Of a stretch of 64,000 nucleotides of DNA, positions 1,248 to 49,051 are shown piece after piece (position 1 is the stretch's first letter; every line of letters begins with the position of its first letter). The DNA is taken from the IMG/VR virus record IMGVR_UViG_3300021057_000274, positions 325,332 to 389,331 of that record. One strand, 5' to 3'. Made by a program: the position numbers and the translations under genes. The notes beneath the pieces were generated by a model, which had not been told where the DNA came from, made no database searches, and saw only the letters and a program-made list of their open reading frames with translations.

Positions 1248-2348
1248 GTGAAGTTCACCAAGCTCTTTTCGCTCCAGTACGGCTCCCGCCTCTACGGCAC
1301 CTCCACCCCGGAGTCCGACCTCGATCTCAAGCACGTCGTCCTTCCGGAGCTCGGTGACCTTCTCGCTGGCAACGCGATCGGCAACGTCGTCAAGAAGACG
1401 AACAACCAGGCAAACACCCGCAACTCCAAGGACGACGTCGACGAGGAGTTCATCCCCGTCCAGGTCTTCGCGAGGGACTTCTTCCGCGGCCAGACGTACG
1501 CGCTCGAGATCGCGTACGCGCTCGAGGGCACGCACTGCGGCCAGACATTTTACTCGGACATCGAAACTCCGCTGGCGCCTTCAACGTACGACGTCAAGAA
1601 AAAGATTCTTCGGCGCGAGCTACCATACATGGATCCCGGGATTAAATTCTTGGAGTTCACCAAGGAGCTTCGTGCCAAGTTCTTGACGTCCAACCTCAAG
1701 GCGATGGTCGGTTACGCCGTCGGTCAAGCGATCAAGTACTCCGCTAAGGGCGAGCGTCTTAACGCCGCACGGCGTGTTCTCGCCGTGCTCAAGGACTACG
1801 CTGATCTCCCCCAAGGCAACAAGCCCTTCGGACCAGGACAGCAGCGGCTCGCTGAGATCGCGGGCGACAATCGCTTCGCGAGCATGGCGTCGGCCTGGTT
1901 TCAGGTCACCGAGTACGACATCGGTGACGGACGCATGCGTCCCTGCTTCAAGCTGCTCGAGAAGACGCTTCCCTTCACCTCGACCGTCGACCACACGATC
2001 GGCGTCGTCGAGGCGATCATCGACAGCTACGGCTCTCGCGCCGACGCGGCTGCATTCACGAATGCCGACTGGAAAGCGCTGATGCATGCCCTCCGCATCA
2101 CCGAGGAGGGCCTGGAGCTGCTCAACCATCACTTCATCACCTTTCCACGCCGCAACGTCGAGAAGCTGCTCGAGGTTAAGAGGGGCATGCACTCTTTCAA
2201 CGACGTCGAGGCTGAGATCAACGCCAAGGTTGATCAGCTCAAGAGTCTCGAGAGATTGTCCTCTCTGCCGAAGCACACTCCCGAGCTCCAAGCCGTGTTC
2301 AACGTCTGGCTGACGACGTGGATGAAGCGCTTCTACGGAGTGAAGTAA
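1248..2348 (+). CDS. pol-beta superfamily nucleotidyltransferase (T4 NrdC.11-like)
   Basis: YGSRLYGTSTPESDLD (GS..DxD) motif; C-terminal WKALMHALR helix; GGAGG SD. Confidence 0.75.
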   Translation: MKFTKLFSLQYGSRLYGTSTPESDLDLKHVVLPELGDLLAGNAIGNVVKKTNNQANTRNSKDDVDEEFIPVQVFARDFFRGQTYALEIAYALEGTHCGQTFYSDIETPLAPSTYDVKKKILRRELPYMDPGIKFLEFTKELRAKFLTSNLKAMVGYAVGQAIKYSAKGERLNAARRVLAVLKDYADLPQGNKPFGPGQQRLAEIAGDNRFASMASAWFQVTEYDIGDGRMRPCFKLLEKTLPFTSTVDHTIGVVEAIIDSYGSRADAAAFTNADWKALMHALRITEEGLELLNHHFITFPRRNVEKLLEVKRGMHSFNDVEAEINAKVDQLKSLERLSSLPKHTPELQAVFNVWLTTWMKRFYGVK

Positions 2349-3225: not shown

Positions 3226-4554
3226 ATGTCCAAACCCTTCGCCGACGCCATCCTGACAGCCGAGCAACACTCGACCCACAAGGAGAAGCACGCGGCGCTC
3301 AGCGGCATGGACAGCAACGGCGTCCGCCTCGTCGTCGAGGCCCTCAACCCGTACCGTCGCTTCCATGTCAAGAAGTTCGACAAGCCGGTCGCTTACGCGA
3401 CCGTCGACGCCGATCTCGGCGAGTTCTTCAAGCTCCTCGATCAGCTCCACGCGCGCACGATCACTGGCAACGCCGCTCGCGCCGCCGTCACCGCCGTCCT
3501 CGGCCTCTTCACCCAGCGTACCGCCGCGGTCCTCGAGCGCGTCCTGATCAAGGACCTCGACTGCGGCGCGTCGTCGACCACCTTCGAGAAGCTCTACCCC
3601 GGCCTCAAGGTGCCGTGCCACAACCTCGGCCTCGCGGTCAACCAGGACACCGTCGCCGACGTCTTCGACGTCATGCAGCCGAACGCCAAGGGCGTCTGGA
3701 AGCCGACCGGCGCGCGGAAGGACCACCTGATCGCCGAGGTCAAGTACGACGGCCATCGCGGCAACCTCCTCGTCGAGAACGGCGGCGTCACCCCGCTCTC
3801 GCGCGGCGGCCGCGTCATCGAGTCATGGGAGGGCCGCTGGGACGCCGAGCTCGCCGAGCTCGAGAAGATGCTCGGCTACCCGTTCGTCCTCGACGGCGAG
3901 GCGATGGGCGCCGACTTCCGCTCGACCAGCAAGAGCCGCGGCAAGGACAAGAGCCGCTCGAAGGACCTCAAGTTCTACGCGTTCGACCTGATCCCGCTCA
4001 CCGCGTGGAAGGCCGAGAAGTACGACCTGGTCCAGTCTGAGCGCTCCGCGCACCTCGAGAAGGTGCTCCGCCTGCTCGGCTCGAAGGACATCATCAAGTC
4101 TGAGTACCGGATCATCAAGACGATGGCCGAGCTCAACGCGTGGTACAAGGAGGTTCTGAAGCTCGGCCAGGAGGGCTTGATCCTCAAGGACCCGAACGGT
4201 GTCTACGTCTGGGACCGCTCGCCCCTGTGGATCAAGTACAAGCCGTACTACTCGTACGACCTGAAGATCACTGGCTGGTACTACGGCAATCCGGGCTCGA
4301 AGTACGAGAAGATGTTGGGCGGCTTCGAGCTCGAGGGCGTTGACGCCGCGTCGGGCAAGTACATCAAGACCCGTTGCGGCGGCGGCCTCTCCGACAAGCA
4401 ACGCGTCGAGTTCCTCGCCGCCATCCTGTCGGGCGTCGACACCCCGATCGGCAAGACCGCTGAGATCGAGGGCAAGGAGCTGTCCCTCGCCGAGAACGCG
4501 ACAGTCTGGGCGGTGCGCGAGCCGGTGTTCGTTCAGATCCGGGACGACAAGTGA
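3226..4554 (+). CDS. ATP-dependent DNA ligase
   Basis: EVKYDGHR (motif I), VLDGE, FYAFDL, EGLILK, WIKYK, C-terminal OB fold. Confidence 0.92.
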   Translation: MSKPFADAILTAEQHSTHKEKHAALSGMDSNGVRLVVEALNPYRRFHVKKFDKPVAYATVDADLGEFFKLLDQLHARTITGNAARAAVTAVLGLFTQRTAAVLERVLIKDLDCGASSTTFEKLYPGLKVPCHNLGLAVNQDTVADVFDVMQPNAKGVWKPTGARKDHLIAEVKYDGHRGNLLVENGGVTPLSRGGRVIESWEGRWDAELAELEKMLGYPFVLDGEAMGADFRSTSKSRGKDKSRSKDLKFYAFDLIPLTAWKAEKYDLVQSERSAHLEKVLRLLGSKDIIKSEYRIIKTMAELNAWYKEVLKLGQEGLILKDPNGVYVWDRSPLWIKYKPYYSYDLKITGWYYGNPGSKYEKMLGGFELEGVDAASGKYIKTRCGGGLSDKQRVEFLAAILSGVDTPIGKTAEIEGKELSLAENATVWAVREPVFVQIRDDK

Positions 4555-5425: not shown

Positions 5426-5686
5426 ATGAGCGGCATCGCCATGGAAGAGATTCACGGTTGGCTCGAGCGCGGAAAGCTGCGAGGCTCGACCCACGTCCTG
5501 GTGATGCAAGACACTTTTGCGAACGAGTACTACCCGATCTTCGTCTCCCCCACCGAGAACGCTCGAGAGGTCGTCGAGAAGATCGAGAGCGACAAGCGCG
5601 AGCTCGCTGATCGCGTCATTGAGGTGTACAACCTGGCCCTTCCGTTCGTCGAGCAGCTCAACGAGAAGCGAGCTCGAAACTTCTGA
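5426..5686 (+). CDS. hypothetical protein
   Basis: 86 aa, stop overlaps next ATG. Confidence 0.65.
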   Translation: MSGIAMEEIHGWLERGKLRGSTHVLVMQDTFANEYYPIFVSPTENAREVVEKIESDKRELADRVIEVYNLALPFVEQLNEKRARNF

Positions 5687-6717
5687 TGCGTCCTGTGGAC
5701 AAGCTAACGGAGGCCGAGCTCCTCTCCGCTACGAGCCCTGAGGCGATCTTCACCGATGACGCCGACACGATGAAGAGAGAGTGGCGCGCTCTCGTTAAGA
5801 TCTGGCATCCTGACCAAAATCCCAAGGCCAATCGTGACGTGATGACTCACGTCAACAAGCTCTACGACGTGGGGTGCGAGAAGCTCAAGCTCGGAATCTG
5901 GTTCAACCCGTACGCGCTGCGCATCAAGGCGACGAACGGGAAGGAGTATGACCTCAAGTTCAAGAAGCACCGCACCTTCGAGCTGGGTGACGTCTACATC
6001 GGGGTCAAGCAGGTCTCCTATCTCCTCGATAAGTCACCCGCCGCGGCCGCGCTCGTCGAGAACATGAAGCAAACGGTCGCGAGCTTTAAGTTCAAGGACG
6101 CCAAGATGGAGGAGCATGCTCGAAAATTTCTACCGAAGATCCTGGCGAGCGTCGAGACAGCCGACAAGCTAGTTGTCGTCCTGGCCAAGGAGCCGGACAT
6201 GATCCTCCTTCGCGATGTCATCGAGCACAAGGGTGGAAAGCTCGACCCGGTGCAAGCGGCGTGGATCATCACCAGGTTCTACAACGTCGGGTCTTATCTC
6301 GACATCATGAAGCTAACTCACAACGACCTGTCGCCCGACTCGATGTTCGTGTCACCCGACCACAAGTCGCTGGTGACCGGCTGGTGGTACGCGACGCCCC
6401 GCGGGCAGAAGATGAGATACGCCTCATCTCGCACGGTCCTCTACTCGCCGATCGACGTCACGACCTACAAGGACGCCAACCACCGCATCGACGGTGAGCT
6501 GATCAAGGCGACCGGCAGAGAGCTGTTCGGCGACCCTGCGGGCTCAGCTCTGAACTTCGATCCCAAGATTCCGCGCCCGCTCAAGGAGTGGGCGACCTCT
6601 CCGAGCTCCGACAACATCGTCGAGGAGTTCAAGAAGTGGCAAGAGACCATCCTCAACAGCTTCGGCAAGCGTCGCTACGTCGAGCTGGACGCAAAGTTTA
6701 GCGACATCTACCCGTAA
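5686..6717 (+). CDS. J-domain (DnaJ-like) fused to degenerate protein-kinase-like domain
   Basis: WRALVKIWHPD J-domain HPD motif; THNDLSPDSMFV resembles a kinase catalytic loop; TGWWY in place of DFG. Confidence 0.65.
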   Translation: MRPVDKLTEAELLSATSPEAIFTDDADTMKREWRALVKIWHPDQNPKANRDVMTHVNKLYDVGCEKLKLGIWFNPYALRIKATNGKEYDLKFKKHRTFELGDVYIGVKQVSYLLDKSPAAAALVENMKQTVASFKFKDAKMEEHARKFLPKILASVETADKLVVVLAKEPDMILLRDVIEHKGGKLDPVQAAWIITRFYNVGSYLDIMKLTHNDLSPDSMFVSPDHKSLVTGWWYATPRGQKMRYASSRTVLYSPIDVTTYKDANHRIDGELIKATGRELFGDPAGSALNFDPKIPRPLKEWATSPSSDNIVEEFKKWQETILNSFGKRRYVELDAKFSDIYP

Positions 6718-6729
6718 AGGAGAAGCAAC

Positions 6730-7647
6730 ATGGGTTCTGGAACCTTCAATCCGCATGAGTGGGACGCTTACCGGACCACGACGGCTCACAAGACCACCAA
6801 GGGTGTCGGCGGCATCTACAAGCGCTCGACGCTCAAGCCCGAGCTCGACCCCCGCACCTTCAAGGTGCGAGAGTCCCGCGACTCGGTCGACAACCCGCAA
6901 TCGACGCCGATCATCGTCGCCCTCGACGTCACCGGCTCGATGAACCCGATCTCCGACAAGATCGCGCGCGAGGGCCTGGGCATCCTCTTCAACGAGATCC
7001 TCAGCCGCAAGCCGGTCACGAACCCGCACCTGATGTTCATGGGCTTCGGTGACGTCGCGGCGCGAGACCCAGCGCCGCTCCAGGTCTCGCAGTTCGAGGC
7101 CGACAACCGCATCGTTGACCAGCTGACCGACATCTGGCTCGTCGGCGGCGGCGGCGGGAACGATTACGAGTCGTACCACCTTCCGCTCTACTTCGCGGCG
7201 ATGCACACCTCGATCGACAGCATCGAGAAGCGCAAGAAGAAGGGCTACCTCTTCACGCTCGGCGACGAGTCGGTGCCGAAGTCTCCGCTGACGCCCGACC
7301 ACATCGAGACGGTGTTCGGCTACAAGTCGCAAGTGTCGCTCTCCTACAAGCAGTGCCTCGAGATGGCGAGCCGGATGTACGAGTGCTTCCACCTCGTCAC
7401 CGCTCAAGGCAACCACGGCTCGCGCTTCTTTCCGCGGTGGCAGGAGGAGATCGGGCAACGCGCGCTCCTCGTCGAGGACTACACCAAGATCGCCGAGGTG
7501 ATCGTCTCGACGATCCAGGTGATGGAGGGTGACAACGTCGCCGCCGTCGTCGACAGCTGGGACCCGGACACCTCGATCGTCGTCAAGCGCGCGGTCGGTA
7601 GCCTCGTTCCGGCGGACCTGAAGAAGCTCGGCGCCGTCAAGCTGTGA
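6730..7647 (+). CDS. vWA domain protein
   Basis: IIVALDVTGSM MIDAS motif, GGGGNDYESY, LFTLGDE; AAGGAG SD. Confidence 0.8.
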   Translation: MGSGTFNPHEWDAYRTTTAHKTTKGVGGIYKRSTLKPELDPRTFKVRESRDSVDNPQSTPIIVALDVTGSMNPISDKIAREGLGILFNEILSRKPVTNPHLMFMGFGDVAARDPAPLQVSQFEADNRIVDQLTDIWLVGGGGGNDYESYHLPLYFAAMHTSIDSIEKRKKKGYLFTLGDESVPKSPLTPDHIETVFGYKSQVSLSYKQCLEMASRMYECFHLVTAQGNHGSRFFPRWQEEIGQRALLVEDYTKIAEVIVSTIQVMEGDNVAAVVDSWDPDTSIVVKRAVGSLVPADLKKLGAVKL

Positions 7648-7868
7648 GGTTCGCGCTTCTTCTCTTGCTCCCGCTTCTCGGCTGTGGGGGACCTCAGCAG
7701 GTTCACATGTCTCCTGAGGAGGTCACCCAGGTTCAATCGGCGTGCGCCGCGATGGGTCTACAGTCGGGCTCTCTTCCTAACAAGGAGATCTCGGCGGGCG
7801 TCGTCTGTTACAAGATCGCGTACCCCGAGGAGAACCAGATCATGAGATCGATAAAGAAGGGTGGCTGA
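7644..7868 (+). CDS. small lipoprotein
   Basis: MRFALLLLLPLLGC lipobox. Confidence 0.6.
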   Translation: MRFALLLLLPLLGCGGPQQVHMSPEEVTQVQSACAAMGLQSGSLPNKEISAGVVCYKIAYPEENQIMRSIKKGG

Positions 7869-8029
7869 TGGATCCAGTCACCAAGGCGATTTTCTTTCTC
7901 CTGACGATCGTCATCTGCGGACTTCCGGCGACCCTGATGGCTCTGCGCAACAAGGGCGACCCTGTCATCGCGACCGTGATCGGGCTCTTAGTCGCCTCGT
8001 CGATGGTCAGCTACATCTCCAAGCTATGA
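7868..8029 (+). CDS. small membrane protein (53 aa)
   Basis: MDPVTKAIFFLLTIVICG...; two hydrophobic stretches; coupled at both ends. Confidence 0.5.
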   Translation: MDPVTKAIFFLLTIVICGLPATLMALRNKGDPVIATVIGLLVASSMVSYISKL

Positions 8030-9177
8030 AAGCGTGCGTCGTCATCGGAGCGAACTACGGCGACGAGGGAAAGGGGCTCGTCACCGATTTTCTCACGTCG
8101 CTGACCGGCGCTGAGCTGGTCGTGCGCTTCAACGGCGGCGCGCAGGCCGGTCACACCGTCGTCACTCCTTGCGGTCGGCGGCACGTCTTTCATCACTTCG
8201 GCGCCGGGACCCTCGCAGGCGCCGCGACGTACCTGAGCCACCACTTTATCGTCAACCCTCTGCTCTTCAACAAGGAGCACGAGGAGCTGCTGACCGACTA
8301 TCGGATGCCGGTGGTCCACGTCAATCCGGAGGCCCCGGTGACGACGATCTACGACATGCTGATCAACCAGCTCGCCGAGGAGGTGCGTGGGGCCTCACGT
8401 CACGGGAGCTGCGGGATCGGGATCAACGAGACCGTTCATCGCCATGAGACGTCGGACTACAAGCTGTGCGTCGGGGACCTCTTCGTGCGTGACGAGAACG
8501 AGCGCACGACGATCCAACGCATGGTCCACATGATCGCGACCCAGTGGGTGCCCCTCCGCCTGGTTCAGCTCGGCATCACGCCGACGAGCTACTTCTCGTC
8601 GATGGTTGACTCGCTAGGAGTAATGAACAAGTGGATCCAGGAGGCTCTCGACTTCACCGACAAGGTCAACCTAGCGGGCGAGGAGGTCATCCTGAGCGCT
8701 AAGGGCGTCATCTTCGAGGGAGCACAAGGGCTGCTTCTCGACCAAAACAATCGTGACGACTTCCCCCACGTCACGAGATCTAACACTGGCCTCAAGAACG
8801 TCGTCGAGATCGCCGAGAGAGTCGGGATCTTCAAGCAGCTCGACGTTCACTACGTGACGCGACCCTACCTCACTCGTCACGGGGCAGGTCGGCTTCACAA
8901 GGAGTGGCCGACGCCGCCCTTCAAGGTCGACGATCAAACTAACGTTCACAACCAGTACCAAGGCGCGATGCGTTACGCGCCGATCAGCCCGATCTCCGTC
9001 GCCTCAAGGGTACACGGAGATGTAGCTCAGGCAGAGCAGCAGAGTGACCTCGAGATTCGCCCGTACCTCGCGATGACGTGCTCGGATCACATGCCGTTCG
9101 ACCCTGAGTTCTTCGACGTCAAGATTCCCCGCAGCCTGATGTCCACTGGCCCCGCCAGAAACCAGGTGAGGTGGTAG
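8026..9177 (+). CDS. divergent adenylosuccinate synthetase-like (PurA family) protein
   Basis: IGANYGDEGKG, RFNGGAQAGHT, FEGAQGLLLD, YLTRHGAG; aspartate-binding TTTGR loop absent; true start likely ATG 8026. Confidence 0.85.
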   Translation: MKACVVIGANYGDEGKGLVTDFLTSLTGAELVVRFNGGAQAGHTVVTPCGRRHVFHHFGAGTLAGAATYLSHHFIVNPLLFNKEHEELLTDYRMPVVHVNPEAPVTTIYDMLINQLAEEVRGASRHGSCGIGINETVHRHETSDYKLCVGDLFVRDENERTTIQRMVHMIATQWVPLRLVQLGITPTSYFSSMVDSLGVMNKWIQEALDFTDKVNLAGEEVILSAKGVIFEGAQGLLLDQNNRDDFPHVTRSNTGLKNVVEIAERVGIFKQLDVHYVTRPYLTRHGAGRLHKEWPTPPFKVDDQTNVHNQYQGAMRYAPISPISVASRVHGDVAQAEQQSDLEIRPYLAMTCSDHMPFDPEFFDVKIPRSLMSTGPARNQVRW

Positions 9178-9937: not shown

Positions 9938-9986
9938 TCGCCTTCATCCTGAATTTAACGTGCGTTCTCTCAATATAGCTAGATTC

Positions 9987-10634
9987 ATGAGCTGGCGGAA
10001 ATATCCTCGTACTCCGCACTTCTCGTTCAGCCCAGGCGCGACCTCGGATGACAAGATCTTGCGTGACCTCTCCGCGTTCGAGGGAGTCGACGTCGTCGTC
10101 TCCGAAAAGCGCGACGGCGAGTGCACGTCGCTCTACACCAATTACTTCCACGCCCGGTCGATCGACTCGAAGAATCACCCGTCGAGAAACTGGCTACGCG
10201 CCTTTCACGCGCAGTTCGCATACAAGATCCCGGAGGGTTGGAGGATCTGCGGTGAGAACCTCTACGCGAGGCACTCGATCGCGTACGATGACCTGACAAG
10301 CTACTTCGAGGGGTTCTCGGTGTGGGACGACCGCAACGTCTCGCTCGCGTGGGCCGCGACTGAGCACATCTTTGTTGATCTCGGGATCACTCCCGTTCCA
10401 GTGCTCTGGCGGGGCAAGTTTAACCTTCAGCGAATCAAGGACACGATCGCGGAGCTAGATTTCAAGCGGCAAGAGGGCATCGTCGTGCGGGTGGCAGGTG
10501 AGATCCCGTACGACCAGTTCGGGTTGAAGGTGGTCAAGTACGTGCGGGTCGACCACGTTCAAACCGATGATCACTGGATGCACGGAGAGATCGTGCCCAA
10601 CCGATTGAAGTTGACGAGCGGTGGAGCAGACTAA
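9987..10634 (+). CDS. RNA ligase family protein
   Basis: KYPRTPH, SEKRDGE (KxDG), ICGEN, EGIVVR, VKYVR. Confidence 0.85.
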   Translation: MSWRKYPRTPHFSFSPGATSDDKILRDLSAFEGVDVVVSEKRDGECTSLYTNYFHARSIDSKNHPSRNWLRAFHAQFAYKIPEGWRICGENLYARHSIAYDDLTSYFEGFSVWDDRNVSLAWAATEHIFVDLGITPVPVLWRGKFNLQRIKDTIAELDFKRQEGIVVRVAGEIPYDQFGLKVVKYVRVDHVQTDDHWMHGEIVPNRLKLTSGGAD

Positions 10635-10971
10635 GAAGCCGTCGGCTCCACCACAAGTCGTCCCAGAAGCCTCGTACGATCTAGACATCGCGGCGATCGC
10701 CAAGCCGCGACAGCTCTACTTTTACTCGAGTCTCTTCGACGCTTATCTTCGGGTCTCCGAGGCCGATCTGGCGTACTTGAACGACCTCGGGCCCTTCTTG
10801 CATGAGATTCCGCCCGGCGCCAGGGTGATCAAGACGATCCAAGAGGGCATGGCCGCGCTAGTGAAGTTGAAGACGAGAGCCACGAAACCGTGGTGGGATG
10901 ATCCAGATCGAGGAGATTTGCGAAGATGGCAGCCTAACTGGGGTGAATGCGATCCGGAGCCAGAAAAGTGA
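10621..10971 (+). CDS. hypothetical protein
   Basis: 116 aa, coupled to next gene. Confidence 0.5.
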   Translation: MEQTKKPSAPPQVVPEASYDLDIAAIAKPRQLYFYSSLFDAYLRVSEADLAYLNDLGPFLHEIPPGARVIKTIQEGMAALVKLKTRATKPWWDDPDRGDLRRWQPNWGECDPEPEK

Positions 10972-11546
10972 TGCCCCACAGGGTTAACGAGCGTGACAAC
11001 TTCATCGGTGGATGGTACACCGAGAGGCTTGACATCTGCTCGAGCTTGATCGGCCTGTTCTGGGACTCTTCAGAGGAGCACAAGGCGGGGCTCATGAGCC
11101 GCGGGCTTGACCCGGCGATCAAGGAGTCTACCGAGCTGAGCTGCGATCAGCAACCCAAGGTGATCGAGTACTTCAACGAGATTCTCGTGCCGACGGTCAA
11201 GCTCTACCTCGAGAAGTACCCGATGTGCGGTTATTACTCGAGCTGGGGCCTCGCGTTACCGGCTAACCTGCAGTACTATAAGCCTGGGCAAGCGTACCAC
11301 GGCTGGCACACCGAGAGGTTCGCGGCGTCGGAGCCCGCGGGTCGACGACATCTCGCGTGGATGACGTACCTCAACACGATTCACGACGAGGGCGAGACTG
11401 AGTTCTATCACCAAGGAGTCAAGGTCAAGCCCGAGATCGGGTTGACGCTCATCTGGGGAGTCGACTGGACGTTCACTCATCGCGGCGTCCCCTCACCGAC
11501 CGCTCACAAGTACATCATCACCGGTTGGTTCAACTTTATCGATTGA
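10968..11546 (+). CDS. 2OG-Fe(II) oxygenase (prolyl hydroxylase-like)
   Basis: WHTE, MTYLN, GETEF, FTHRG, KYIITGW. Confidence 0.85.
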   Translation: MMPHRVNERDNFIGGWYTERLDICSSLIGLFWDSSEEHKAGLMSRGLDPAIKESTELSCDQQPKVIEYFNEILVPTVKLYLEKYPMCGYYSSWGLALPANLQYYKPGQAYHGWHTERFAASEPAGRRHLAWMTYLNTIHDEGETEFYHQGVKVKPEIGLTLIWGVDWTFTHRGVPSPTAHKYIITGWFNFID

Positions 11547-35039: not shown

Positions 35040-37703
35040 ATGTTGCTTCGCGAGACCAACGACTCACAGTTTGACAGCAATCTCGACGGATCGGCTAGCA
35101 CCACGACGGTAGCCACCGTCGACGTCAGCTCAAAGATCTTCTCGATCCTCTCGGACGGCATCTACAAGGACAAGATCCTCGCCGTTGTCCGTGAGGTCTG
35201 CTGCAACGCCTACGACGCCCACGTCGCGGCTGGCAAGAAGTCCGTTCCGATCCACATCAAGATGCCGACGTGGAACGACCCGTCGTTCGCGGTCGACGAC
35301 GAGGGTACCGGGATCGATCCGTCCCAGATCACCAGCATCTACCTCTCGTACGGCAAGTCGACGAAGACGAGCTCCAACGACCAGATCGGCGCGCTCGGCC
35401 TCGGTTGCAAGTCACCTCTCGCTTACACCAAGAACTCGTTCATCATCAAGAATCGCTGGAACGGGACAGAATACACCTACTTCATTTACCTCAACGAACG
35501 CGGCATCCCGGCGATGTCGAAGACGAGCGAGATGCCCGTCTCCGAGGCGAACCGCCTCCGTGACGAGAAGGGGCAGCGTGCGGTCAAGGACTTCGGCCTG
35601 ACGGTCGAGTTCGCGGTGCGCAAGGATGACACCCACGTCTTCCGCAGTCGGGTTCAGCGCTTCTTCCGCTACTGGGGCGGAGCGCTCCCAGAGGTTTCGG
35701 GCGTCAACGACGACCTCTTCTCCTCGACCAAGGTCAAGAAGGTTCTCAACGGGAGCGACTGGTTTCTCGAGGCTAAAGAGGACGACGACCGCGACTTCCG
35801 CGGCGCCGTCGCGATCCAGGGCAACGTGCCCTACCCGATCGAGTTCGACTCCCTGCCGAAGCTCCCGAAGGAGCTGCAGGTCATCGTTCGCAATCCGTTC
35901 GTCATCGTCTACGACATGGGCTCCCTCGCGTTTCAAGCCTCCCGCGAAGCCCTCTCGTACGATGACATCACGGTCAAGAACCTGGTCGAGCGCTTCGAGG
36001 ACGTCAAGGCGGACCTCGTCAAGACGTTCAACGCGACGGTCTTCAAGAAGGGGCGTTCGCACCTCCAGTTCATCCACGACCTGGTCGAGAAGTTCCGCAC
36101 CTTCCAGAAGAGCGTGTCGCACATCACGACGAATTCGACCGACGTTGACGACCAGTACTGCCAGTTCCTCTTCGGGCAGCCCCTCGAGACGGCGACGGTC
36201 AAGTACGACGGCGCGACCTTCTCGATCAAGGATCTCCTGCAGGGTAAGATCGTTACCCGGCACACGACCGGGCACCAGAACTTCACGCTGATGTGTCTCG
36301 AGCCGAAGGGCCGCAGCGGTCGCCGCACTGTGCTGACGCACAAGACGACGGTCAACTACGTGCTAAACAAGGAGATGCGCGAAGAGGAGCTCTTTCCGGA
36401 GACTGACCATCGCGTCATCCCGACGAAGGACAAGAAGATCGCTAAGGGACAGTGCTTCTCGATGCCGTGGCGCACCGACCGTGTCAACAAGAAGGACGAC
36501 TCCGACTTCGCGAACGTCATCCGACACGCAAAGAACTTCAGCATCACGACCGTCAATCGCATCCCGGTGCAAGGGCGCTTCGGCGTCGCGAAGGTCAAGA
36601 TCGTCCTGAACGACTGTGTCAGCACCGGCGACGCTCGAATGAAGGCCCTTCTCACCCACATCGAGTACGCGAGCAAGGCCGTGTCGCCGCACTTCATCTA
36701 CGTCACCTTCGACCCAAAGGTGACTGACGTCGCCGAGGTCAAGAAGCAGATCGAGGTGCTGATCCAGACTGGCTTGAAGGGCGCCGAGATCGAGCTGCTC
36801 TCGTCATACCCCGACCATCGCGCGATCGTCGATCGCGAGGCGAAGGAGCGTGGGAAGTTCAAGCTATCGACCCGCGAGATCGCTATCTCGAGAGAGTCAA
36901 CGACGATCTCCCTCGGCTACAACCAGTCGGCCGATCTCAACGACGTCACCTTTACTGACAAGCAAGAGGTCTTTTCCCTCGACGCCATGCAGGCGATGCC
37001 GATGGTCGTCTATTGCTACAAGGGGCGCGGTGCTGGCCAGTTCTTCGATCGGAGCGTTAACCCGGACGATCGTACTCTCTCACTGGCGAACAACAGCGAC
37101 GCTCTCAGCCTCGCCCATCATCTCGGCGTGCTGACCAGGGTCTTTGACGAGGCGAAGAGCTGCAAGGTCTTTACTCTCGCTGAGAGCCAGAAGAACTGGT
37201 TGGGGGCTCGGGGCGTCAACCTCGTTCCGTTCGAGGACCTGATGATCAAGTACACCGCTGAGATGAGCAAAGCGGCTGGGGACTACCGGAATCGAATCGC
37301 GAAGACGATCTGTATCCGAAACATCGGCCAGATCAACAGCTTCTATAGCAACTACGAGCGACTGTGCGCCAAGAACAAAACGCGCTTCGAGGGCTGGGCG
37401 AACCCGAGCCCTTTCATCGACACGGTTCTCACGATCATGAACCAGTCGAACGACAAGCGCGACTTCATGGTCGAGGCCCTCAACCAACGCCTCAACGGAA
37501 GCTCGATCCAGATCAGCGCCAGAGAGACGGCTGCGATCACGAAGGTGATCGAGAGCCGATACCCGCTGCTTCATCGCGTTTACCTGTCGACGCACGACAA
37601 GTCGATCTTCGAGGCGATCCTCGATTACATTGATCTGGTAGATCAGCGCGCGGCGAGCGCTCCAGCGGCGCAAGTTGGCTCAGACGACACGGCGAGCGCT
37701 TAG
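35040..37703 (+). CDS. rIIA: rIIA-like protein (N-terminal GHKL/HSP90-like ATPase)
   Basis: KIFSILSDGIYKDKILAVVREVCCNAYDAH, D.GTG, YGKSTK..SN..IGALGLGCKSP; directly upstream of rIIB-like gene. Confidence 0.8.
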   Translation: MLLRETNDSQFDSNLDGSASTTTVATVDVSSKIFSILSDGIYKDKILAVVREVCCNAYDAHVAAGKKSVPIHIKMPTWNDPSFAVDDEGTGIDPSQITSIYLSYGKSTKTSSNDQIGALGLGCKSPLAYTKNSFIIKNRWNGTEYTYFIYLNERGIPAMSKTSEMPVSEANRLRDEKGQRAVKDFGLTVEFAVRKDDTHVFRSRVQRFFRYWGGALPEVSGVNDDLFSSTKVKKVLNGSDWFLEAKEDDDRDFRGAVAIQGNVPYPIEFDSLPKLPKELQVIVRNPFVIVYDMGSLAFQASREALSYDDITVKNLVERFEDVKADLVKTFNATVFKKGRSHLQFIHDLVEKFRTFQKSVSHITTNSTDVDDQYCQFLFGQPLETATVKYDGATFSIKDLLQGKIVTRHTTGHQNFTLMCLEPKGRSGRRTVLTHKTTVNYVLNKEMREEELFPETDHRVIPTKDKKIAKGQCFSMPWRTDRVNKKDDSDFANVIRHAKNFSITTVNRIPVQGRFGVAKVKIVLNDCVSTGDARMKALLTHIEYASKAVSPHFIYVTFDPKVTDVAEVKKQIEVLIQTGLKGAEIELLSSYPDHRAIVDREAKERGKFKLSTREIAISRESTTISLGYNQSADLNDVTFTDKQEVFSLDAMQAMPMVVYCYKGRGAGQFFDRSVNPDDRTLSLANNSDALSLAHHLGVLTRVFDEAKSCKVFTLAESQKNWLGARGVNLVPFEDLMIKYTAEMSKAAGDYRNRIAKTICIRNIGQINSFYSNYERLCAKNKTRFEGWANPSPFIDTVLTIMNQSNDKRDFMVEALNQRLNGSSIQISARETAAITKVIESRYPLLHRVYLSTHDKSIFEAILDYIDLVDQRAASAPAAQVGSDDTASA

Positions 37704-37708
37704 AGTTG

Positions 37709-37737
37709 TTTACTTTGAGGCGTTCCTAAGTTATAAT
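37709..37737 (+). promoter_or_regulatory. sigma70-like early promoter
   Basis: TTTACT-N17-TATAAT. Confidence 0.85.
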
Positions 37738-37762
37738 CGCACCATCAAATGGAGGCTACCAC

Positions 37763-38914
37763 TTGACCGACTTTCACTTCGTGACCCACACCACCGGTGT
37801 GGCGATGGTCCGCAACGGACGGCACGCTGTCGTGATGAACGACCAGCCGAACTTTTCGTACGTCATGGACGTTCTCCGTAGTCTGAAGGGACTACGCGGC
37901 GAGGCCCTCGAAGCCAAGCTCAAGGACCTGGACAAGGTCATGACGGTCGGCGGATTGGTCGAGAGCTTCGGCCAGCCGAAGGACCACAAGCTCAAGGACT
38001 GCCGGGTCTTCGTGGAGAAGGGCAAGCTCTTTTACTCGGAGTACCGCGGCCACAAGCAGGAGCTGCACGGCGCCCTCGCGGAGAGGATCCTCCAAGACCT
38101 CGGGAAGCCGTCCAAGGCGTTCGCGCGGTACGGCGACGCCCTGATGCGGTTCATGCAGAACATCCGCAAGAACAAGGTCAAGGACATCCGCAACGAGCTG
38201 TACGAGTGGCTGATGTCCGGCAAGGCGCCGATCACGTATGACGGTTGCTTCCTGGCGTACAAGAAGGTGCGGAGCAACTTCATGGACGGCCACACCGGGA
38301 CGATCGACAACTCGCCCGGCAACGTCGTCAGGATGCAGCAGTCGGAGGTCGACACGAACCGAGAGAACCACTGCTCGGTCGGCTTGCACTTTTGCTCGAA
38401 GGGGTACCTGGATCACTTCGGCGCCGGCGGCGCCAGCAAGATCGTGATCGTCAAGGTGAACCCGCGGCACGTGTTCGCGATCCCGACGGACTACAAGTTC
38501 CAGAAGGGTCGGGCCAGCGAGTACTTCGTGGTCGGGGAGTACACCGGCGCGCGAAACACCGATGACGGCCCGGTCGCGGAGGCATTTAAGGACGCCTTCA
38601 TCGACGAGGACACGAAGCAAGACGCGATGCCGGACGTCAAGCTGGTCGGGTGGCTCCGGCCAAGCTTGGAGAACCTGGCCAAGAGCTACGGGCTCCTGAC
38701 CGATGACGGCAAGGTGCTGATCCTCGAACGTCGCGGTAGGATGGTGCCGGTGAAGCAGGCGGCAAACGGCAAGTTCGAGGACATCGTCGGAATGCATCAA
38801 GCAACCGACGACGGCTTGGATGCGCCAAAGTCGATGTCGCTCCAGACCAAGTCGGTCCGGCAAGCGGTGCGAGCCGCGATCAACAAGGTGGAGAAGGGGC
38901 TCACCACGCGTTAG
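37763..38914 (+). CDS. rIIB: rIIB-like protein
   Basis: PITYDGCFLAYKKV...DGHTG.IDNSPG..V.M....VD......CSVGLHFCS..Y...VKVNP..V..IP.DY...KGR. Confidence 0.82.
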   Translation: MTDFHFVTHTTGVAMVRNGRHAVVMNDQPNFSYVMDVLRSLKGLRGEALEAKLKDLDKVMTVGGLVESFGQPKDHKLKDCRVFVEKGKLFYSEYRGHKQELHGALAERILQDLGKPSKAFARYGDALMRFMQNIRKNKVKDIRNELYEWLMSGKAPITYDGCFLAYKKVRSNFMDGHTGTIDNSPGNVVRMQQSEVDTNRENHCSVGLHFCSKGYLDHFGAGGASKIVIVKVNPRHVFAIPTDYKFQKGRASEYFVVGEYTGARNTDDGPVAEAFKDAFIDEDTKQDAMPDVKLVGWLRPSLENLAKSYGLLTDDGKVLILERRGRMVPVKQAANGKFEDIVGMHQATDDGLDAPKSMSLQTKSVRQAVRAAINKVEKGLTTR

Positions 38915-47445: not shown

Positions 47446-47532
47446 GCCAGACTGGCGGAATCGGCAGACGCGCTAGTCTCAAAAATTAGTACCCGTGAGG
47501 GTGTCCCGGTTCGAGCCCGGGGTCTGGCACCA
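47446..47532 (+). tRNA. tRNA-Leu(CAA)
   Basis: GCCAGAC/GTCTGGC acceptor, CT-CAA-AA loop, long V arm, TTCGAG, CCA. Confidence 0.92.
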
Positions 47533-47533
47533 A

Positions 47534-47621
47534 GGATGGTTGGCAGAGTGGCCAATTGCACCTGGCTGTAAACCAGGCGCCCTGACGGGCTTCGGTGGTT
47601 CAAATCCATCACCATCCACCA
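47534..47621 (+). tRNA. tRNA-Tyr(GTA)
   Basis: CCTGG-CTGTAAA-CCAGG, long V arm, TTCAAAT, CCA. Confidence 0.93.
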
Positions 47622-47626
47622 ACATT

Positions 47627-47718
47627 GGGTCTGGTCATAAGGACGGGTGGTCCTGTCAGGAGCCTGTAAAGCTCTTCCTCAGCGAGGCACGGAGTTCGAT
47701 TCTACCCCAGACCCACCA
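47627..47718 (+). tRNA. atypical tRNA-Tyr(GTA), 8-bp acceptor
   Basis: GGGTCTGG/CCAGACCC, GGAGC-CTGTAAA-GCTCT, enlarged D arm, short bulged T stem, CCA. Confidence 0.7.
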
Positions 47719-47722
47719 AATT

Positions 47723-47812
47723 GGAGAGTGAACCGCACGGGGTGTGGCACTGCCTGGAAAGCAGTCGGGCTGGCGTAAGCTGGTCGCGGGTCGGGACCGC
47801 CGCTCTCCTCCA
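47723..47812 (+). tRNA. tRNA-Ser(GGA), 8/4 fold
   Basis: GGAGAGTG/CGCTCTCC, 6-bp D stem, ACTGC-CTGGAAA-GCAGT, GCGG/CCGC T stem, CCA. Confidence 0.85.
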
Positions 47813-47830
47813 AGTTGTAGAAGTAACGCT

Positions 47831-47919
47831 GCCCTCGTGGACAAATTGGTAAAGTTGCCAGGCTCAGAACCTGGAGCCGCGAAAGCGTATTGTCGGTTCG
47901 ACTCCGACCGAGGGCACCA
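47831..47919 (+). tRNA. tRNA-Leu(CAG)
   Basis: CCAGG-CTCAGAA-CCTGG, long V arm, TTCGACT, CCA. Confidence 0.92.
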
Positions 47920-47927
47920 ACACGAGA

Positions 47928-48010
47928 CCCCTCGTGGCAAATGGAAATTGGTACACCTACTAGATCGAGAGTCTAGGCTTTTCTCGGTTCGAATCCGAGC
48001 GAGGGGACCA
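47928..48010 (+). tRNA. atypical tRNA-Leu(GAG): short V arm, C33
   Basis: CCCCTCG/CGAGGGG, CTAGA-TCGAGAG-TCTAG, TTCGAAT, CCA. Confidence 0.65.
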
Positions 48011-48014
48011 GCAT

Positions 48015-48107
48015 GGAAGACGAACCGAGAAGGTCTCGGACTCGCCTTGAAAGCGATGGGATCGCGGCCAACCCGTGATTGGGGATCATCTCCTCCGTCT
48101 TCCGCCA
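48015..48107 (+). tRNA. tRNA-Ser(TGA), 8/4 fold
   Basis: GGAAGACG/CGTCTTCC, CCGAGA-AGG-TCTCGG D arm, CT-TGA-AA loop, T loop ATCATCT, GCCA. Confidence 0.82.
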
Positions 48108-48111
48108 GTAT

Positions 48112-48195
48112 GCGAGCGTGGTGGAATGGTATACACACGTGCCTTAGGAGCACGTGCCGCAAGGTATGTGGGTTCGACTCCCACCGCTCGCACCA
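48112..48195 (+). tRNA. tRNA-Leu(TAG)
   Basis: CGTGC-CTTAGGA-GCACG, TTCGACT, CCA. Confidence 0.93.
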
Positions 48196-48206
48196 AAGGA
48201 GACGAC

Positions 48207-48404: not shown

Positions 48405-48467
48405 CGCTGCCTCGAAAGCAGATGGACTCGGAAACGGGCTGGGGGTCGGGACCTCCGTCATCCGCCA
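48380..48467 (+). tRNA. tRNA-Ser(CGA), 8/4 fold
   Basis: GGATGACG/CGTCATCC, CTAGTC-AGG-GACTAG, CT-CGA-AA loop, GCCA. Confidence 0.85.
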
Positions 48468-49046: not shown

Positions 49047-49051
49047 ACCTT

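What the first reader, a model, noticed from the sequence alone, without database searches (positions are those of the whole stretch)
5686..9177. J-domain/pseudo-kinase + vWA + substrate-altered PurA module
Seen: the PurA-like protein keeps the GTP/catalytic GDEGKG and AGHT motifs. However, the IMP-contacting GTT..GIGP segment reads HGSCGIGINET, and the aspartate-binding GTTTGR loop is replaced by DQTNVHNQYQGAMR. It is co-transcribed with an HPD J-domain/kinase-like fusion and a MIDAS vWA protein. Inference: a GTP-dependent ligase with a different nucleotide and/or amine (possibly a protein) substrate, acting in an uncharacterised three-gene system rather than AMP synthesis.
Basis: partly seen in the sequence, partly recalled or inferred. 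Interest (0 to 1): 0.62.

Follow-up and report, generated by a model that had tools for sequence, protein, structure and literature searches.

The report
Altered PurA enzyme, vWA partner, J-pseudokinase
A giant phage carries a widespread but undescribed gene module, in which an adenylosuccinate-synthetase relative with a rebuilt substrate pocket is always paired with a vWA protein and usually with a chaperone-recruiting pseudokinase, so it is very unlikely to make AMP.

Summary
Window 5686-9177 (+) encodes three proteins:
- a J-domain (HPD) plus kinase-fold protein;
- a MIDAS vWA protein;
- a PurA-like enzyme, whose true start is ATG 8026, not 7861.
Two small ORFs lie between the vWA and PurA-like genes.

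The PurA-like protein keeps the GTP and catalytic residues. It replaces the IMP-phosphate threonines and two of the three aspartate-loop arginines with other residues. These replacements are just as invariant across 318 relatives. It scores far below the curated PurA and PurZ cut-offs.

The vWA and PurA-like genes are adjacent in about 97-99% of 235 loci from bacteria and viruses. The J-pseudokinase joins them in about 50-75% of loci. An NrtR-type regulator is present in 30 of 80 bacterial loci. Bacterial hosts that were checked keep a normal purA.

The vWA protein has an invariant N-terminal Met-Gly. It also has a C-terminal tail whose form tracks the presence of the J-pseudokinase.

My best reading is an active GTP-dependent purine-C6 ligase that uses an amine other than aspartate. 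It would work with a vWA adaptor that the J-domain protein couples to host DnaK. The substrates and the biological role remain unknown. I found no published description of the module.

The parts
5686..6717 (+). J-domain + kinase-fold protein (343 aa), called JK here. The J domain spans about residues 1-69 (5686-5892) and the kinase-like domain spans residues 70-343.
   Evidence: AF2 model has pLDDT 95. Top PDB matches are DnaJB1-PKAc chimeras and protein kinases. Weak Pfam DnaJ hit and a PHROG 'kinase' hit. It is 34% identical over its full length to the bacterial homologue in L010.
5806..5814 (+). HPD tripeptide of the J domain
   Evidence: H41 is invariant, and P42 and D43 are conserved in at least 90% of 35 homologues. 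The translation was verified.
6307..6393 (+). Degenerate kinase catalytic loop (MKLTHNDLSPDSM) and the GWW segment in the DFG position
   Evidence: Across the family the HRD Asp, the catalytic-loop Asn and the DFG Asp are not conserved. G232-W233 is invariant. This marks a pseudokinase.
6730..7647 (+). vWA (MIDAS) protein, 305 aa. It is the obligate partner of the PurA-like gene.
   Evidence: AF2 model has pLDDT 84 and Foldseek gives a vWA fold at probability 1.0. It matches phrog_2971 and no Pfam family. An AAGGAG Shine-Dalgarno sequence lies upstream.
6730..6789 (+). Conserved N-terminal arm, MG-x-x-x-[WF]-x-x-x-D-[WY]-x-x-[YF]. The protein begins exactly with Met-Gly.
   Evidence: M1 is present in 202 of 207 and G2 in 205 of 207 homologues. 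All 80 viral homologues begin with MG.
6925..6939 (+). MIDAS motif D-V-T-G-S (D66, T68, S70)
   Evidence: These residues are invariant in the 24-sequence alignment, together with D179 of LFTLGDE.
7630..7644 (+). Extreme C-terminal tail G-A-V-K-L-COOH, of the type G-[VIL]-[VI]-[RK]-[FL]
   Evidence: The tail is present in 55 of 63 loci with the JK gene and 2 of 20 without it (Fisher p = 3e-10). Phylogenetically independent pairs are too few for significance.
7644..7868 (+). Small inserted ORF (74 aa) with a lipoprotein-like signal peptide and an LLGC lipobox. It is not part of the conserved module.
   Evidence: Translation. No family hit. Inserts of 0.3-1.6 kb between the vWA and PurA-like genes are common in viral loci.
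7868..8029 (+). Small inserted ORF (53 aa). Its stop overlaps the PurA-like start (ATGA).
   Evidence: phrog_32463 at E 4.6e-4. The overlap was verified.
8026..9177 (+). PurA-like enzyme (383 aa) of a distinct adenylosuccinate-synthetase subfamily
   Evidence: PF00709 at 1.7e-37, over the N-terminal 275 of 416 profile positions only. hhalign aligns the full length to PurA. It scores below the PurA and PurZ cut-offs. Subfamily residues are invariant in 318 members.
8059..8076 (+). P-loop GDEGKG (equivalents of E. coli Asp13 and Lys16)
   Evidence: D and K are present in 315 of 315 aligned members.
8146..8157 (+). AGHT (equivalent of catalytic His41). The preceding Gln replaces E. coli Asn38.
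   Evidence: H in 316 of 318 and Q in 314 of 318 members.
8398..8433 (+). RHGSCGIGINET, replacing the IMP 5'-phosphate loop IGTTGRGIGPAYED
   Evidence: S128 in 315 of 318, C129 in 295 of 318, H126 in 305 of 318 and R139 in 317 of 318 members.
8932..8973 (+). DQTNVHNQYQGAMR, replacing the aspartate-binding loop GNEFGATTGRRRR
   Evidence: N306 in 318 of 318, Q312 in 317 of 318 and R316 in 315 of 318 members. The E. coli R303 position is S/T/A and the R305 position is L/I/F.
9076..9090 (+). T-C-S-D-H, the counterpart of the guanine-specificity motif TKLD (Lys331 changed to Cys/His, Asp333 kept)
   Evidence: D354 in 283 of 318 members. Position 352 is C in 230 and H in 81 members.

Best explanation
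The region holds a conserved, mobile module whose obligate core is a MIDAS-vWA protein plus a divergent adenylosuccinate-synthetase-family enzyme. A J-domain/pseudokinase protein is a frequent third member.

Shown by sequence and comparative evidence:
- The enzyme retains everything needed to bind GTP and phosphorylate the C6 oxygen of a purine nucleotide: the P-loop Asp and Lys, the catalytic His, Gln224, Thr239 and the guanine-specificity Asp.
- Its aspartate loop and 5'-phosphate loop have been rebuilt into a different pocket that is conserved just as strictly.

Inferred:
- It is an active GTP-dependent ligase that makes an N6-substituted purine nucleotide from an amine other than L-aspartate. 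The nucleotide may also be altered.
- The vWA protein acts as its peptide-binding adaptor or co-chaperone, as vWA proteins do for MoxR ATPases. Here the ATPase would be the host Hsp70 (DnaK).
- DnaK would be recruited through the HPD J-domain of the pseudokinase, which docks on the conserved C-terminal tail of the vWA protein.

The module is not AMP synthesis and not the PurZ (2-aminoadenine) pathway. Three features fit a nucleotide-centred stress or conflict function that phages also deploy: patchy occurrence in many bacterial phyla, NrtR-type (Nudix-wHTH) regulators beside it, and hundreds of large phages that carry it. The product and the target are unknown.
For: Enzyme:
- In 318 non-identical members D13 is 315/315, K16 315/315, H43 316/318 and Q234 318/318.
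- Subfamily-specific H285 is 318/318, N306 318/318, Q312 317/318, R139 317/318 and R316 315/318.
- The E. coli R303 position is S/T/A and the R305 position is L/I/F.
- Curated models reject it: PurA 112 bits against 402, TIGR00184 90 against 396, PurZ 45.5 against 300.
- Canonical purA is present in 5 of 5 host genomes.

Pairing:
- The vWA gene is followed by the PurA-like gene in 77 of 80 GTDB-species loci; the other three are cut by contig ends. The same holds in 79 of 80 IMG/VR loci.
- Starting from the PurA-like side, the vWA gene lies upstream in 73 of 75 loci.
- The same pair occurs in cluster C mycobacteriophages, Vibrio phages and Rhizobium phages.

J-domain/kinase protein:
- It is present in 60 of 80 bacterial and 40 of 75 viral loci.
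- HPD is invariant and the kinase catalytic Asp, Asn and Asp are not conserved. The fold is J domain plus kinase.
- The vWA C-terminal tail tracks its presence (55/63 against 2/20).
- The 389-kb phage record has no Hsp70 gene, so a J domain there would have to use host DnaK.

Context:
- An NrtR-like regulator sits beside 30 of 80 bacterial loci.
- The module was found in 3 of 201 genomes of one bacterial family, so it is patchy.
- The vWA-plus-chaperone logic is established for MoxR-vWA systems (PMC7159879).
Against: - No biochemical data exist for any member.
- The one complex prediction (PurA-like + GTP + vWA) gave no verdict, so physical binding of the pair is unproven.
- The tail-JK association rests on about 5 independent evolutionary events and is not significant after phylogenetic control.
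- A quarter to a half of modules lack the JK gene, so DnaK coupling cannot be essential to the core reaction.
- Bacterial flanks are not typical defence islands, and PADLOC models do not hit any of the three proteins.
- Retention of one arginine in the remodelled loop, and of most nucleotide contacts, leaves open that an acidic amino acid is still used.
Confidence: 0.5

Rival explanations
1. Protein-directed ligase. The amine that attacks the 6-phosphoryl-purine intermediate is the free alpha-amino group of the vWA protein's N-terminal glycine, exposed after Met removal. The vWA protein would then be N-terminally 'purinylated' (linked to N6 of AMP). The J-pseudokinase and DnaK would handle the modified or unmodified protein.
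For: - The vWA protein begins exactly with Met-Gly in 205 of 207 homologues and in all 80 viral ones. The Gly sits on a flexible arm with conserved aromatic residues (pLDDT 49-73).
- The enzyme never occurs without this protein.
- The aspartate loop is replaced by an Asn/Gln/Thr-rich loop that could read a peptide backbone.
Against: - There is no direct evidence, and the complex prediction gave no verdict.
- An invariant Met-Gly can have other causes, such as stability, an intramolecular MIDAS ligand or a regulatory pseudo-substrate.
- No precedent exists for this chemistry on proteins.
Confidence: 0.15
2. Ordinary auxiliary metabolic PurA. The phage boosts AMP synthesis, and the neighbouring genes are unrelated.
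For: It hits Pfam PF00709, and databases annotate it 'adenylosuccinate synthase'. The catalytic core is intact.
Against: - It scores 3-4 times below the curated PurA cut-offs.
- Two of the three conserved arginines of the aspartate loop (R303, R305) and both IMP-phosphate threonines are replaced in the whole subfamily.
- It is strictly linked to the vWA gene.
- Host genomes already have purA.
Confidence: 0.03
3. PurZ-like or other DNA-base pathway. The enzyme makes a precursor for a modified adenine (2-aminoadenine or an N6-substituted dA) that goes into phage DNA.
For: - PHROG and RefSeq label the family '2-aminooxy adenylosuccinate synthetase'.
- It occurs in many large phages.
- It lies in a nucleic-acid metabolism region of this phage.
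Against: - Asp13 is kept, whereas phage PurZ proteins have Ser there (PMC12884076).
- The PurZ model scores 45.5 bits against a cut-off of 300.
- No DatZ-like gene is in the 389-kb record.
- The same module sits in hundreds of bacterial chromosomes under NrtR-type regulators, which makes a DNA-replacement pathway unlikely.
Confidence: 0.07
4. Non-catalytic GTP switch. The PurA-like protein has become a regulatory GTPase-like subunit of a vWA/Hsp70 assembly and ligates nothing.
For: It has the SIMIBI-type P-loop fold. It is paired with proteins typical of chaperone or signalling assemblies.
Against: Residues used only for chemistry on the purine and the amine (His41 equivalent, Gln224 equivalent, the remodelled loop) are invariant. 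That is not expected for a mere switch.
Confidence: 0.07

Closest known systems
Adenylosuccinate synthetase PurA (E. coli type; PF00709, TIGR00184)
   Same: It is homologous over the full length (hhalign probability 100, 370 columns). It keeps the P-loop GDEGKG, catalytic His, Gln224, Thr239 and guanine-specificity Asp. It is therefore very likely to use the same two-step chemistry: GTP phosphorylates the purine O6, then an amine displaces the phosphate.
   Different: - Thr128/Thr129 are Ser/Cys, and Asn38 is Gln.
- Val273 is His, and Lys331 is Cys or His.
- There is no Arg143 equivalent.
- Only one of the three conserved arginines of the aspartate loop (R303, R305, R306) remains.
- It is about 50 residues shorter.
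- It scores 112 bits against a cut-off of 402.
- It is always encoded next to a vWA protein, and it coexists with a true purA.
PurZ / PurZ0 (2-aminoadenine pathway of Z-genome phages)
   Same: It is a phage-borne PurA paralogue with changed substrate specificity. Databases lump the two under one label.
   Different: - PurZ has Ser in place of Asp13, keeps aspartate as its substrate, and comes with DatZ, MazZ and DpoZ.
- This protein keeps Asp13 and changes the aspartate loop.
- It scores 45.5 bits against a cut-off of 300.
- It has no DatZ-like partner, and it is common in bacterial chromosomes.
MoxR-vWA chaperone/co-chaperone pairs (CbbQ-CbbO, NorQ-NorD, RavA-ViaA; the 'ternary systems' of Kaur et al. 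2020)
   Same: A MIDAS-vWA adaptor is encoded next to a client enzyme and is linked to an ATP-driven chaperone. The likely logic is the same: the vWA domain captures a peptide and the chaperone remodels the client.
   Different: No MoxR AAA+ gene is present. The proposed ATPase is host Hsp70, recruited by a J-domain/pseudokinase protein. The client or effector is an AdSS-family enzyme, which has not been reported in those systems.
TerY-P triad (vWA + Ser/Thr kinase + PP2C phosphatase)
   Same: It is a three-gene cassette that combines a vWA protein with a kinase-fold protein. It is found sporadically in bacteria.
   Different: There is no PP2C phosphatase. The kinase fold here lacks the catalytic residues and carries a J domain. 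PADLOC models do not match. The third gene is a PurA-like enzyme.
Phage-encoded J-domain proteins (e.g. Rki of phage RB43; DnaJ-domain proteins of jumbo phages)
   Same: It is a phage protein with an HPD J domain that would have to act through host DnaK.
   Different: The J domain is fused to a pseudokinase domain. The protein belongs to a three-gene module that is shared with bacteria.

Membership tests
Canonical adenylosuccinate synthetase (PurA) | P-loop GDEGKG with catalytic Asp13 and Lys16, and His41 in AGHT | tested here: met
   Present in the window protein. D and K are in 315 of 315 and H in 316 of 318 subfamily members.
Canonical adenylosuccinate synthetase (PurA) | IMP 5'-phosphate contacts Thr128/Thr129 (GTTGRGIGP) and Arg143 from the partner subunit | tested here: not met
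   The segment reads HGSCGIGINET. No Arg aligns with Arg143, though an invariant Arg139 lies nearby.
Canonical adenylosuccinate synthetase (PurA) | Aspartate-binding loop GATTGRxRR (Arg303, Arg305) | tested here: not met
   The loop is replaced by D-x-T-N-x-x-N-x-x-Q-G-x-L-R. The Arg303 position is S/T/A and the Arg305 position is L/I/F in 318 members.
Canonical adenylosuccinate synthetase (PurA) | Score above the curated equivalog cut-off | tested here: not met
   NF002223 scores 111.8 against 402 and TIGR00184 scores 89.7 against 395.55.
Canonical adenylosuccinate synthetase (PurA) | Catalyses IMP + L-Asp + GTP to adenylosuccinate, and complements a purA mutant | not testable with these tools
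   This needs enzymology or genetics. Indirect evidence: 5 of 5 carrier genomes keep a separate canonical purA.
PurZ (2-amino-adenylosuccinate synthetase) | Ser replaces catalytic Asp13 | tested here: not met
   Asp is retained in 315 of 315 members. The criterion comes from PMC12884076.
PurZ (2-amino-adenylosuccinate synthetase) | Score above the NCBIfam NF038379 cut-off | tested here: not met
   45.5 bits against 300, and the match covers only the first 60 residues.
PurZ (2-amino-adenylosuccinate synthetase) | Z-cluster partners (DatZ, MazZ) in the same genome | tested here: not met
   No PF12917 (YfbR/DatZ-like) match in the 389-kb record. The neighbours are the vWA and J-kinase genes instead. 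MazZ and DpoZ were not searched.
vWA / MIDAS domain proteins | vWA alpha/beta fold | tested here: met
   AF2 model has pLDDT 84 and pTM 0.86. Foldseek gives probability 1.0 to integrin I-like, ANTXR2 and Ku80 vWA domains.
vWA / MIDAS domain proteins | MIDAS residues DxSxS ... T ... D | tested here: inconclusive
   DxTxS (D66, T68, S70) and D179 are invariant. The middle Thr position falls in the invariant GGGGGNxxES loop and cannot be assigned without coordinates. Metal binding is untested.
vWA / MIDAS domain proteins | Recognised by a Pfam vWA model | tested here: not met
   No Pfam hit at E <= 0.1. It matches only phrog_2971, of unknown function.
J-domain proteins (Hsp70 co-chaperones) | HPD tripeptide in the loop between helices II and III | tested here: met
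   HPD lies at residues 41-43, between H26-40 and H50-69. It is conserved in 35 homologues.
J-domain proteins (Hsp70 co-chaperones) | Pfam DnaJ gathering score | tested here: not met
   18.2 bits against 27.8. The fold match to DnaJB1-PKA chimeras supports the assignment.
J-domain proteins (Hsp70 co-chaperones) | Stimulates the DnaK ATPase | not testable with these tools
   This needs biochemistry. No Hsp70 gene is in the phage record.
Active eukaryotic-like protein kinases | Bilobal kinase fold | tested here: met
   Foldseek gives probability 1.0 to PKA, EGFR, Aurora and VRK kinases.
Active eukaryotic-like protein kinases | Catalytic HRD Asp, catalytic-loop Asn and DFG Asp | tested here: not met
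   The window protein reads H-N-D-L-S-P-D-S, with G-W-W in the DFG position. Across 35 homologues the Asp and Asn positions are not conserved (HNAI, HNSI, HQDI and others) and GW is invariant.
MoxR-vWA chaperone systems | Adjacent MoxR-type AAA+ ATPase gene | tested here: not met
   No such gene is among the conserved neighbours in 80 bacterial or 80 viral loci.
TerY-P triad (defence) | TerY-type vWA + active kinase + PP2C phosphatase, matching PADLOC models | tested here: not met
   No PADLOC hit for any of the three proteins. No phosphatase is among the conserved neighbours.

The most novel reading that the evidence does not exclude
The PurA-like enzyme is a protein ligase. It activates a purine nucleotide at C6 with GTP and joins it to the free alpha-amine of the invariant N-terminal glycine of its vWA partner. 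This would create a new kind of post-translational mark, a protein linked to N6 of AMP. The J-pseudokinase and DnaK would read or reset the mark. Bacteria and large phages would use it as a nucleotide-charged switch in stress or virus-host conflict.
Probability: 0.12. Interest if true: 0.9.

Novelty: new variant of a known kind. Interest (0 to 1): 0.66.

Why it matters
- Hundreds of phage and bacterial genes now labelled 'adenylosuccinate synthetase', 'PurA-like' or '2-aminooxy adenylosuccinate synthetase' belong to a separate subfamily. That subfamily almost certainly does neither job. The labels should not be used to infer purine auxiliary metabolism or Z-genomes.
- The subfamily's pocket is conserved as strictly as PurA's own. 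A defined but unknown reaction therefore awaits discovery, as PurZ did before 2021.
- The pairing with a vWA adaptor and an Hsp70-recruiting pseudokinase would extend the MoxR-vWA 'activase' logic to the Hsp70 system.
- Cultured, genetically tractable carriers exist, so the question can be tested directly. They include cluster C mycobacteriophages, Vibrio phage Va1, Rhizobium phages, Clostridium carboxidivorans and Acetobacter malorum.

Tried and rejected
- Complex prediction (PurA-like + GTP + vWA, with my own alignments) scored 0.13 and 0.08 against a mark of 0.32. It gave no verdict and counts neither for nor against binding.
- tblastn of the JK protein against 50,697 phage records found nothing. 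A pairwise comparison and Pfam show that the Tonenili 'kinase' shares the kinase core and a weak J domain. The word-based protein search found only two JK relatives. Most JK homologues had to be recovered from loci.
- PADLOC gave no hit. NCBIfam gave only sub-threshold PurA and PurZ hits.
- Eight literature searches and six papers read in part yielded no description of the module.
- The tail-JK correlation was tested with phylogenetically independent pairs. Only 5 pairs were available. The direction was consistent (about 3.8 the same way, 0 opposite) but not significant.
- I looked for further universal partners by clustering flank ORFs. Only clade-specific neighbours appeared, apart from the NrtR-like regulator in bacteria.
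- Apparent fusions or extensions of the PurA-like protein (P0107, L028, L022) gave no informative extra domain.
- The PurZ pathway and a plain PurA auxiliary gene were considered and rejected, as set out under the rival explanations.

Full report
**Where the window lies.** The window is the last 64 kb of a 389-kb IMG/VR virus record. The surrounding genes are plainly phage genes. They include:
- RIIA and RIIB homologues, a helicase and a seven-gene tRNA cluster;
- an ATP-dependent DNA ligase, an RNA ligase and a nucleotidyltransferase.

**The genes in 5686-9177.** The + strand carries five tightly packed ORFs.

| Coordinates | Size | Product |
|---|---|---|
| 5686-6717 | 343 aa | J-domain/kinase-like protein (JK) |
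| 6730-7647 | 305 aa | vWA protein |
| 7644-7868 | 74 aa | small ORF, lipoprotein-like |
| 7868-8029 | 53 aa | small ORF, phrog_32463 |
| 8026-9177 | 383 aa | PurA-like enzyme |

- The long GTG-7861 version of the last ORF is unlikely. All homologues begin 3-6 residues before the P-loop.
- Adjacent ORFs overlap by 1-4 nt. The junction at 8026 reads ATGA.
- No terminator-like site occurs before 9906.
- Co-transcription is therefore a reasonable inference, but it has not been shown.

**The PurA-like enzyme.**
- Pfam PF00709 matches at 1.7e-37, but only over the first 275 of 416 profile positions.
- A profile-profile alignment with canonical PurA (E. coli plus five genomes that carry the module) shows homology over the full length: probability 100, 370 columns.

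Retained:
- GDEGKG (E. coli Asp13, Lys16) and AGHT (His41);
- FEGAQG (Gln224) and the Thr239 equivalent;
- TRxGAGP;
- the Asp of the guanine-specificity motif (TKLD becomes TCSD) and S-x-G-P-x-R.

Changed:
- Asn38 is Gln, Thr128/Thr129 are Ser/Cys, and Val273 is His;
- Lys331 is Cys or His, and there is no Arg143 equivalent;
- the aspartate loop GNEFGATTGRRRR is replaced by DQTNVHNQYQGAMR.

I aligned 318 non-identical members: 77 from GTDB genomes, 121 from viral contigs, 119 from metagenomes, and the window protein itself. The retained catalytic residues are essentially invariant. The replacement residues are just as invariant:

| Window residue | E. coli equivalent | Conservation (of 318 unless shown) |
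|---|---|---|
| D13 | Asp13 | 315/315 aligned |
| K16 | Lys16 | 315/315 aligned |
| H43 | His41 | 316 |
| Q234 | Gln224 | 318 |
| H285 | Val273 | 318 |
| N306 | (new loop) | 318 |
| Q312 | Thr301 | 317 |
| R139 | (near Arg143) | 317 |
| R316 | Arg306 (or Arg305) | 315 |
| position 314 | Arg303 | S/T/A |
| position 315 | Arg305 | L/I/F |

This is the signature of an active enzyme with a different but defined substrate pocket. It is not the signature of a decaying PurA.

The curated models agree:

| Model | Score (bits) | Cut-off (bits) |
|---|---|---|
| NF002223 (PurA) | 112 | 402 |
| TIGR00184 (purA) | 90 | 396 |
| NF038379 (PurZ) | 45.5 | 300 |

- Phage PurZ proteins carry Ser in place of Asp13 (PMC12884076). 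This subfamily keeps Asp.
- No DatZ-like gene is in the phage record.
- The roles I give to the E. coli residues come from my recollection of the AdSS structural literature. I did not re-derive them here.

**The vWA protein.**
- No Pfam family matches. The only hit is phrog_2971, of unknown function.
- An AlphaFold model built on 24 homologues has pLDDT 84. It matches integrin I-like domains, ANTXR2, Ku80 and other vWA domains at Foldseek probability 1.0.
- D66-x-T68-x-S70 and D179 are invariant. This is consistent with a MIDAS site.
- The N-terminus stands out. The protein starts exactly with Met-Gly in 205 of 207 homologues and in all 80 viral ones. The Gly heads a low-confidence arm with conserved aromatic residues, MG-x-x-x-[WF]-x-x-x-D-[WY]-x-x-[YF].
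- The C-terminus also stands out. After a variable linker the chain ends in a conserved pentapeptide, G-[VIL]-[VI]-[RK]-[FL]-COOH. In the window protein it is GAVKL.

**The J-domain/kinase protein.**
- The model has pLDDT 95. Its best PDB matches are the DnaJB1-PKA catalytic-subunit chimeras, followed by ordinary protein kinases.
- HPD sits between helices II and III and is conserved in 35 homologues.
- The HRD Asp, the catalytic-loop Asn and the DFG Asp are not conserved. The DFG position is an invariant G-W.
- The label 'J-domain plus pseudokinase' is therefore supported.
- The phage encodes no Hsp70, so any J-domain activity would use host DnaK.

**Conservation of the module.**

Isolated phages:
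- The same order (kinase, hypothetical protein, 'PurA-like') occurs in cluster C mycobacteriophages such as Tonenili. Identity is 31-32% for the vWA and PurA-like proteins.
- The vWA + PurA-like pair is adjacent in Vibrio phage Va1 and Rhizobium phage TM30.
- Counts by host match almost exactly for the two genes: 201 and 200 Mycobacterium records, 10 and 10 Rhizobium, 6 and 6 Vibrio.

GTDB species genomes:
- In the best 80 loci, which span many phyla, the PurA-like gene follows immediately in 77. The other three loci are cut by contig ends.
- The phyla include Bacillota, Pseudomonadota, Acidobacteriota, Cyanobacteria/Melainabacteria, Myxococcota and Nitrospirota, plus a Thermoplasmatales MAG.
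- The JK gene precedes the pair in 60 of the 80 loci.
- A Nudix-wHTH regulator of the NrtR family lies just upstream, usually divergent, in 30 of the 80 loci.

IMG/VR viral contigs:
- 403 viral stretches encode the vWA protein.
- In the best 80 loci the PurA-like gene follows in 79. The JK gene is present in 40 of the 75 loci with enough upstream sequence.
- Starting from the enzyme side, 73 of 75 viral loci have the vWA gene upstream.
It holds only for the JK gene.

Other points:
- Five of five bacterial genomes with the module also have a canonical purA at 424-582 bits.
- Within the family of Clostridium carboxidivorans the module was found in 3 of 201 genomes searched. It is a patchy, mobile accessory.
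- Bacterial flanks are heterogeneous and do not look like defence islands.
- PADLOC models do not match any of the three proteins.

**A link between the JK protein and the vWA tail.**
- The hydrophobic-hydrophobic-[RKE]-[FLWY] C-terminal tail is present in 55 of 63 loci that have the JK gene. It is present in 2 of 20 loci without it (odds ratio 62, Fisher p = 3e-10).
- On a tree of the vWA proteins there are only about five independent pairs. The tail changes in the same direction in about 3.8 of them and never in the opposite direction. That cannot reach significance.
- JK-less viral modules often carry a different conserved tail, P-[KR]-[LM]-[LIA]-G/L. From memory, this resembles classical DnaK-binding peptides. 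I treat it only as a lead.

**Mechanism.**
- Shown: the gene content, the folds, the residue patterns and the co-occurrence described above.
- Inferred: the enzyme binds GTP, phosphorylates the C6 oxygen of a purine nucleotide and couples it to an amine that is not L-aspartate.
- Inferred: the vWA protein is its adaptor or co-chaperone. vWA proteins play this role for MoxR ATPases in CbbQO, NorQD, RavA-ViaA and the 'ternary' conflict systems (PMC7159879).
- Inferred: in place of MoxR, the module recruits Hsp70 through the J-pseudokinase, which docks on the vWA tail.
- Context: NrtR-type regulators are known sensors of ADP-ribose and appear beside other conflict systems (PMC9503650). This fits a nucleotide-centred stress or conflict role, but it proves nothing about the product.
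- Most novel reading not excluded: the invariant N-terminal glycine of the vWA protein is itself the amine acceptor. The single complex prediction allowed gave no verdict, so this remains speculation.

**Literature.**
- Eight full-text searches and targeted reading found no description of this module.
- The reading covered the 2026 PurZ phylogeny paper and the Aravind-lab surveys of vWA systems, jumbo phages and NAD/ADPr systems.
- The PurZ paper sorts 767 sequences into a PurA group (251) and a PurZ group (151) and does not discuss the rest.

**Verdict.**
- The enzyme is a new variant of a known kind: an AdSS-superfamily ligase with new specificity, set in a chaperone-adaptor arrangement.
- The module is widespread, mis-annotated and experimentally tractable.

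Noticed in passing
window 7644-7868 and 7868-8029: Two small ORFs are wedged between the vWA and PurA-like genes. One is a 74-aa protein with a lipoprotein-type signal and an LLGC lipobox. The other is a 53-aa protein matching phrog_32463. Many viral loci likewise carry inserts of 0.3-1.6 kb at this junction, whereas bacterial loci usually have none.
   Followed up: partly
Cluster C mycobacteriophages, e.g. Yassified OR613471.1 151339-151908 (hit H143): In a subset of cluster C phages the match to the vWA protein stops at residue 176 (58% coverage). In one record the feature under the match is annotated as an HNH endonuclease. This suggests that a homing-endonuclease or intein-type insertion splits the vWA gene.
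   Followed up: no
L012-L091 (bacterial loci), e.g. L022 4132-4788 (-) and L010 5157-5819 (-): A Nudix-like + winged-helix regulator of the NrtR family (PF21906, E 1e-18) lies just upstream of the module, usually divergent, in 30 of 80 bacterial loci. It is absent from the phage versions.
   Followed up: partly
viral loci L100-L133 (JK-less modules): vWA proteins of modules that lack the J-pseudokinase often end in a different conserved tail, such as APKMLGAP, SPRLIGGPA or TPRLALTA. This is a basic residue followed by Leu-rich residues, reminiscent of DnaK-binding peptides.
   Followed up: no
window 1248-2348, 3226-4554, 9960-10634, 10947-11546: The module sits in a nucleic-acid repair and metabolism block. 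The block holds a nucleotidyltransferase (phrog_388), an ATP-dependent DNA ligase, an RNA ligase and a 2OG-Fe(II) oxygenase. Tonenili has a polynucleotide kinase two genes upstream of its module.
   Followed up: partly
window 47446-49480: A tRNA cluster holds four tRNA-Leu (CAA, CAG, TAG, GAG), one tRNA-Tyr and two tRNA-Trp genes.
   Followed up: no
window 35040-38914: RIIA-like (887 aa) and RIIB-like (383 aa) genes lie side by side. This places the phage among T4-like or jumbo myoviruses.
   Followed up: no
G000:C1:148204-148317 (outside the window): A second, weak J-domain match (23 bits, profile positions 29-66) lies in a 285-aa open frame elsewhere in the same phage genome.
   Followed up: no
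PHROG phrog_1211; RefSeq phage records (e.g. NC_031080.1 157315-158643): The family label '2-aminooxy adenylosuccinate synthetase' is applied to this subfamily, although it fails the PurZ criteria. It is probably an annotation error that has propagated.
   Followed up: yes
L003 3203-3859 (Vibrio phage Va1) and L004 603-2269 (Rhizobium phage TM30): In the two isolate phages that lack the JK gene, NAD/ADP-ribose-related genes lie within a few kb upstream. TM30 has an annotated phosphoribosyltransferase and an NMN adenylyltransferase/Nudix protein. In Va1, a protein that I judged by eye to be YbiA/NADAR-like was not scanned.
   Followed up: no
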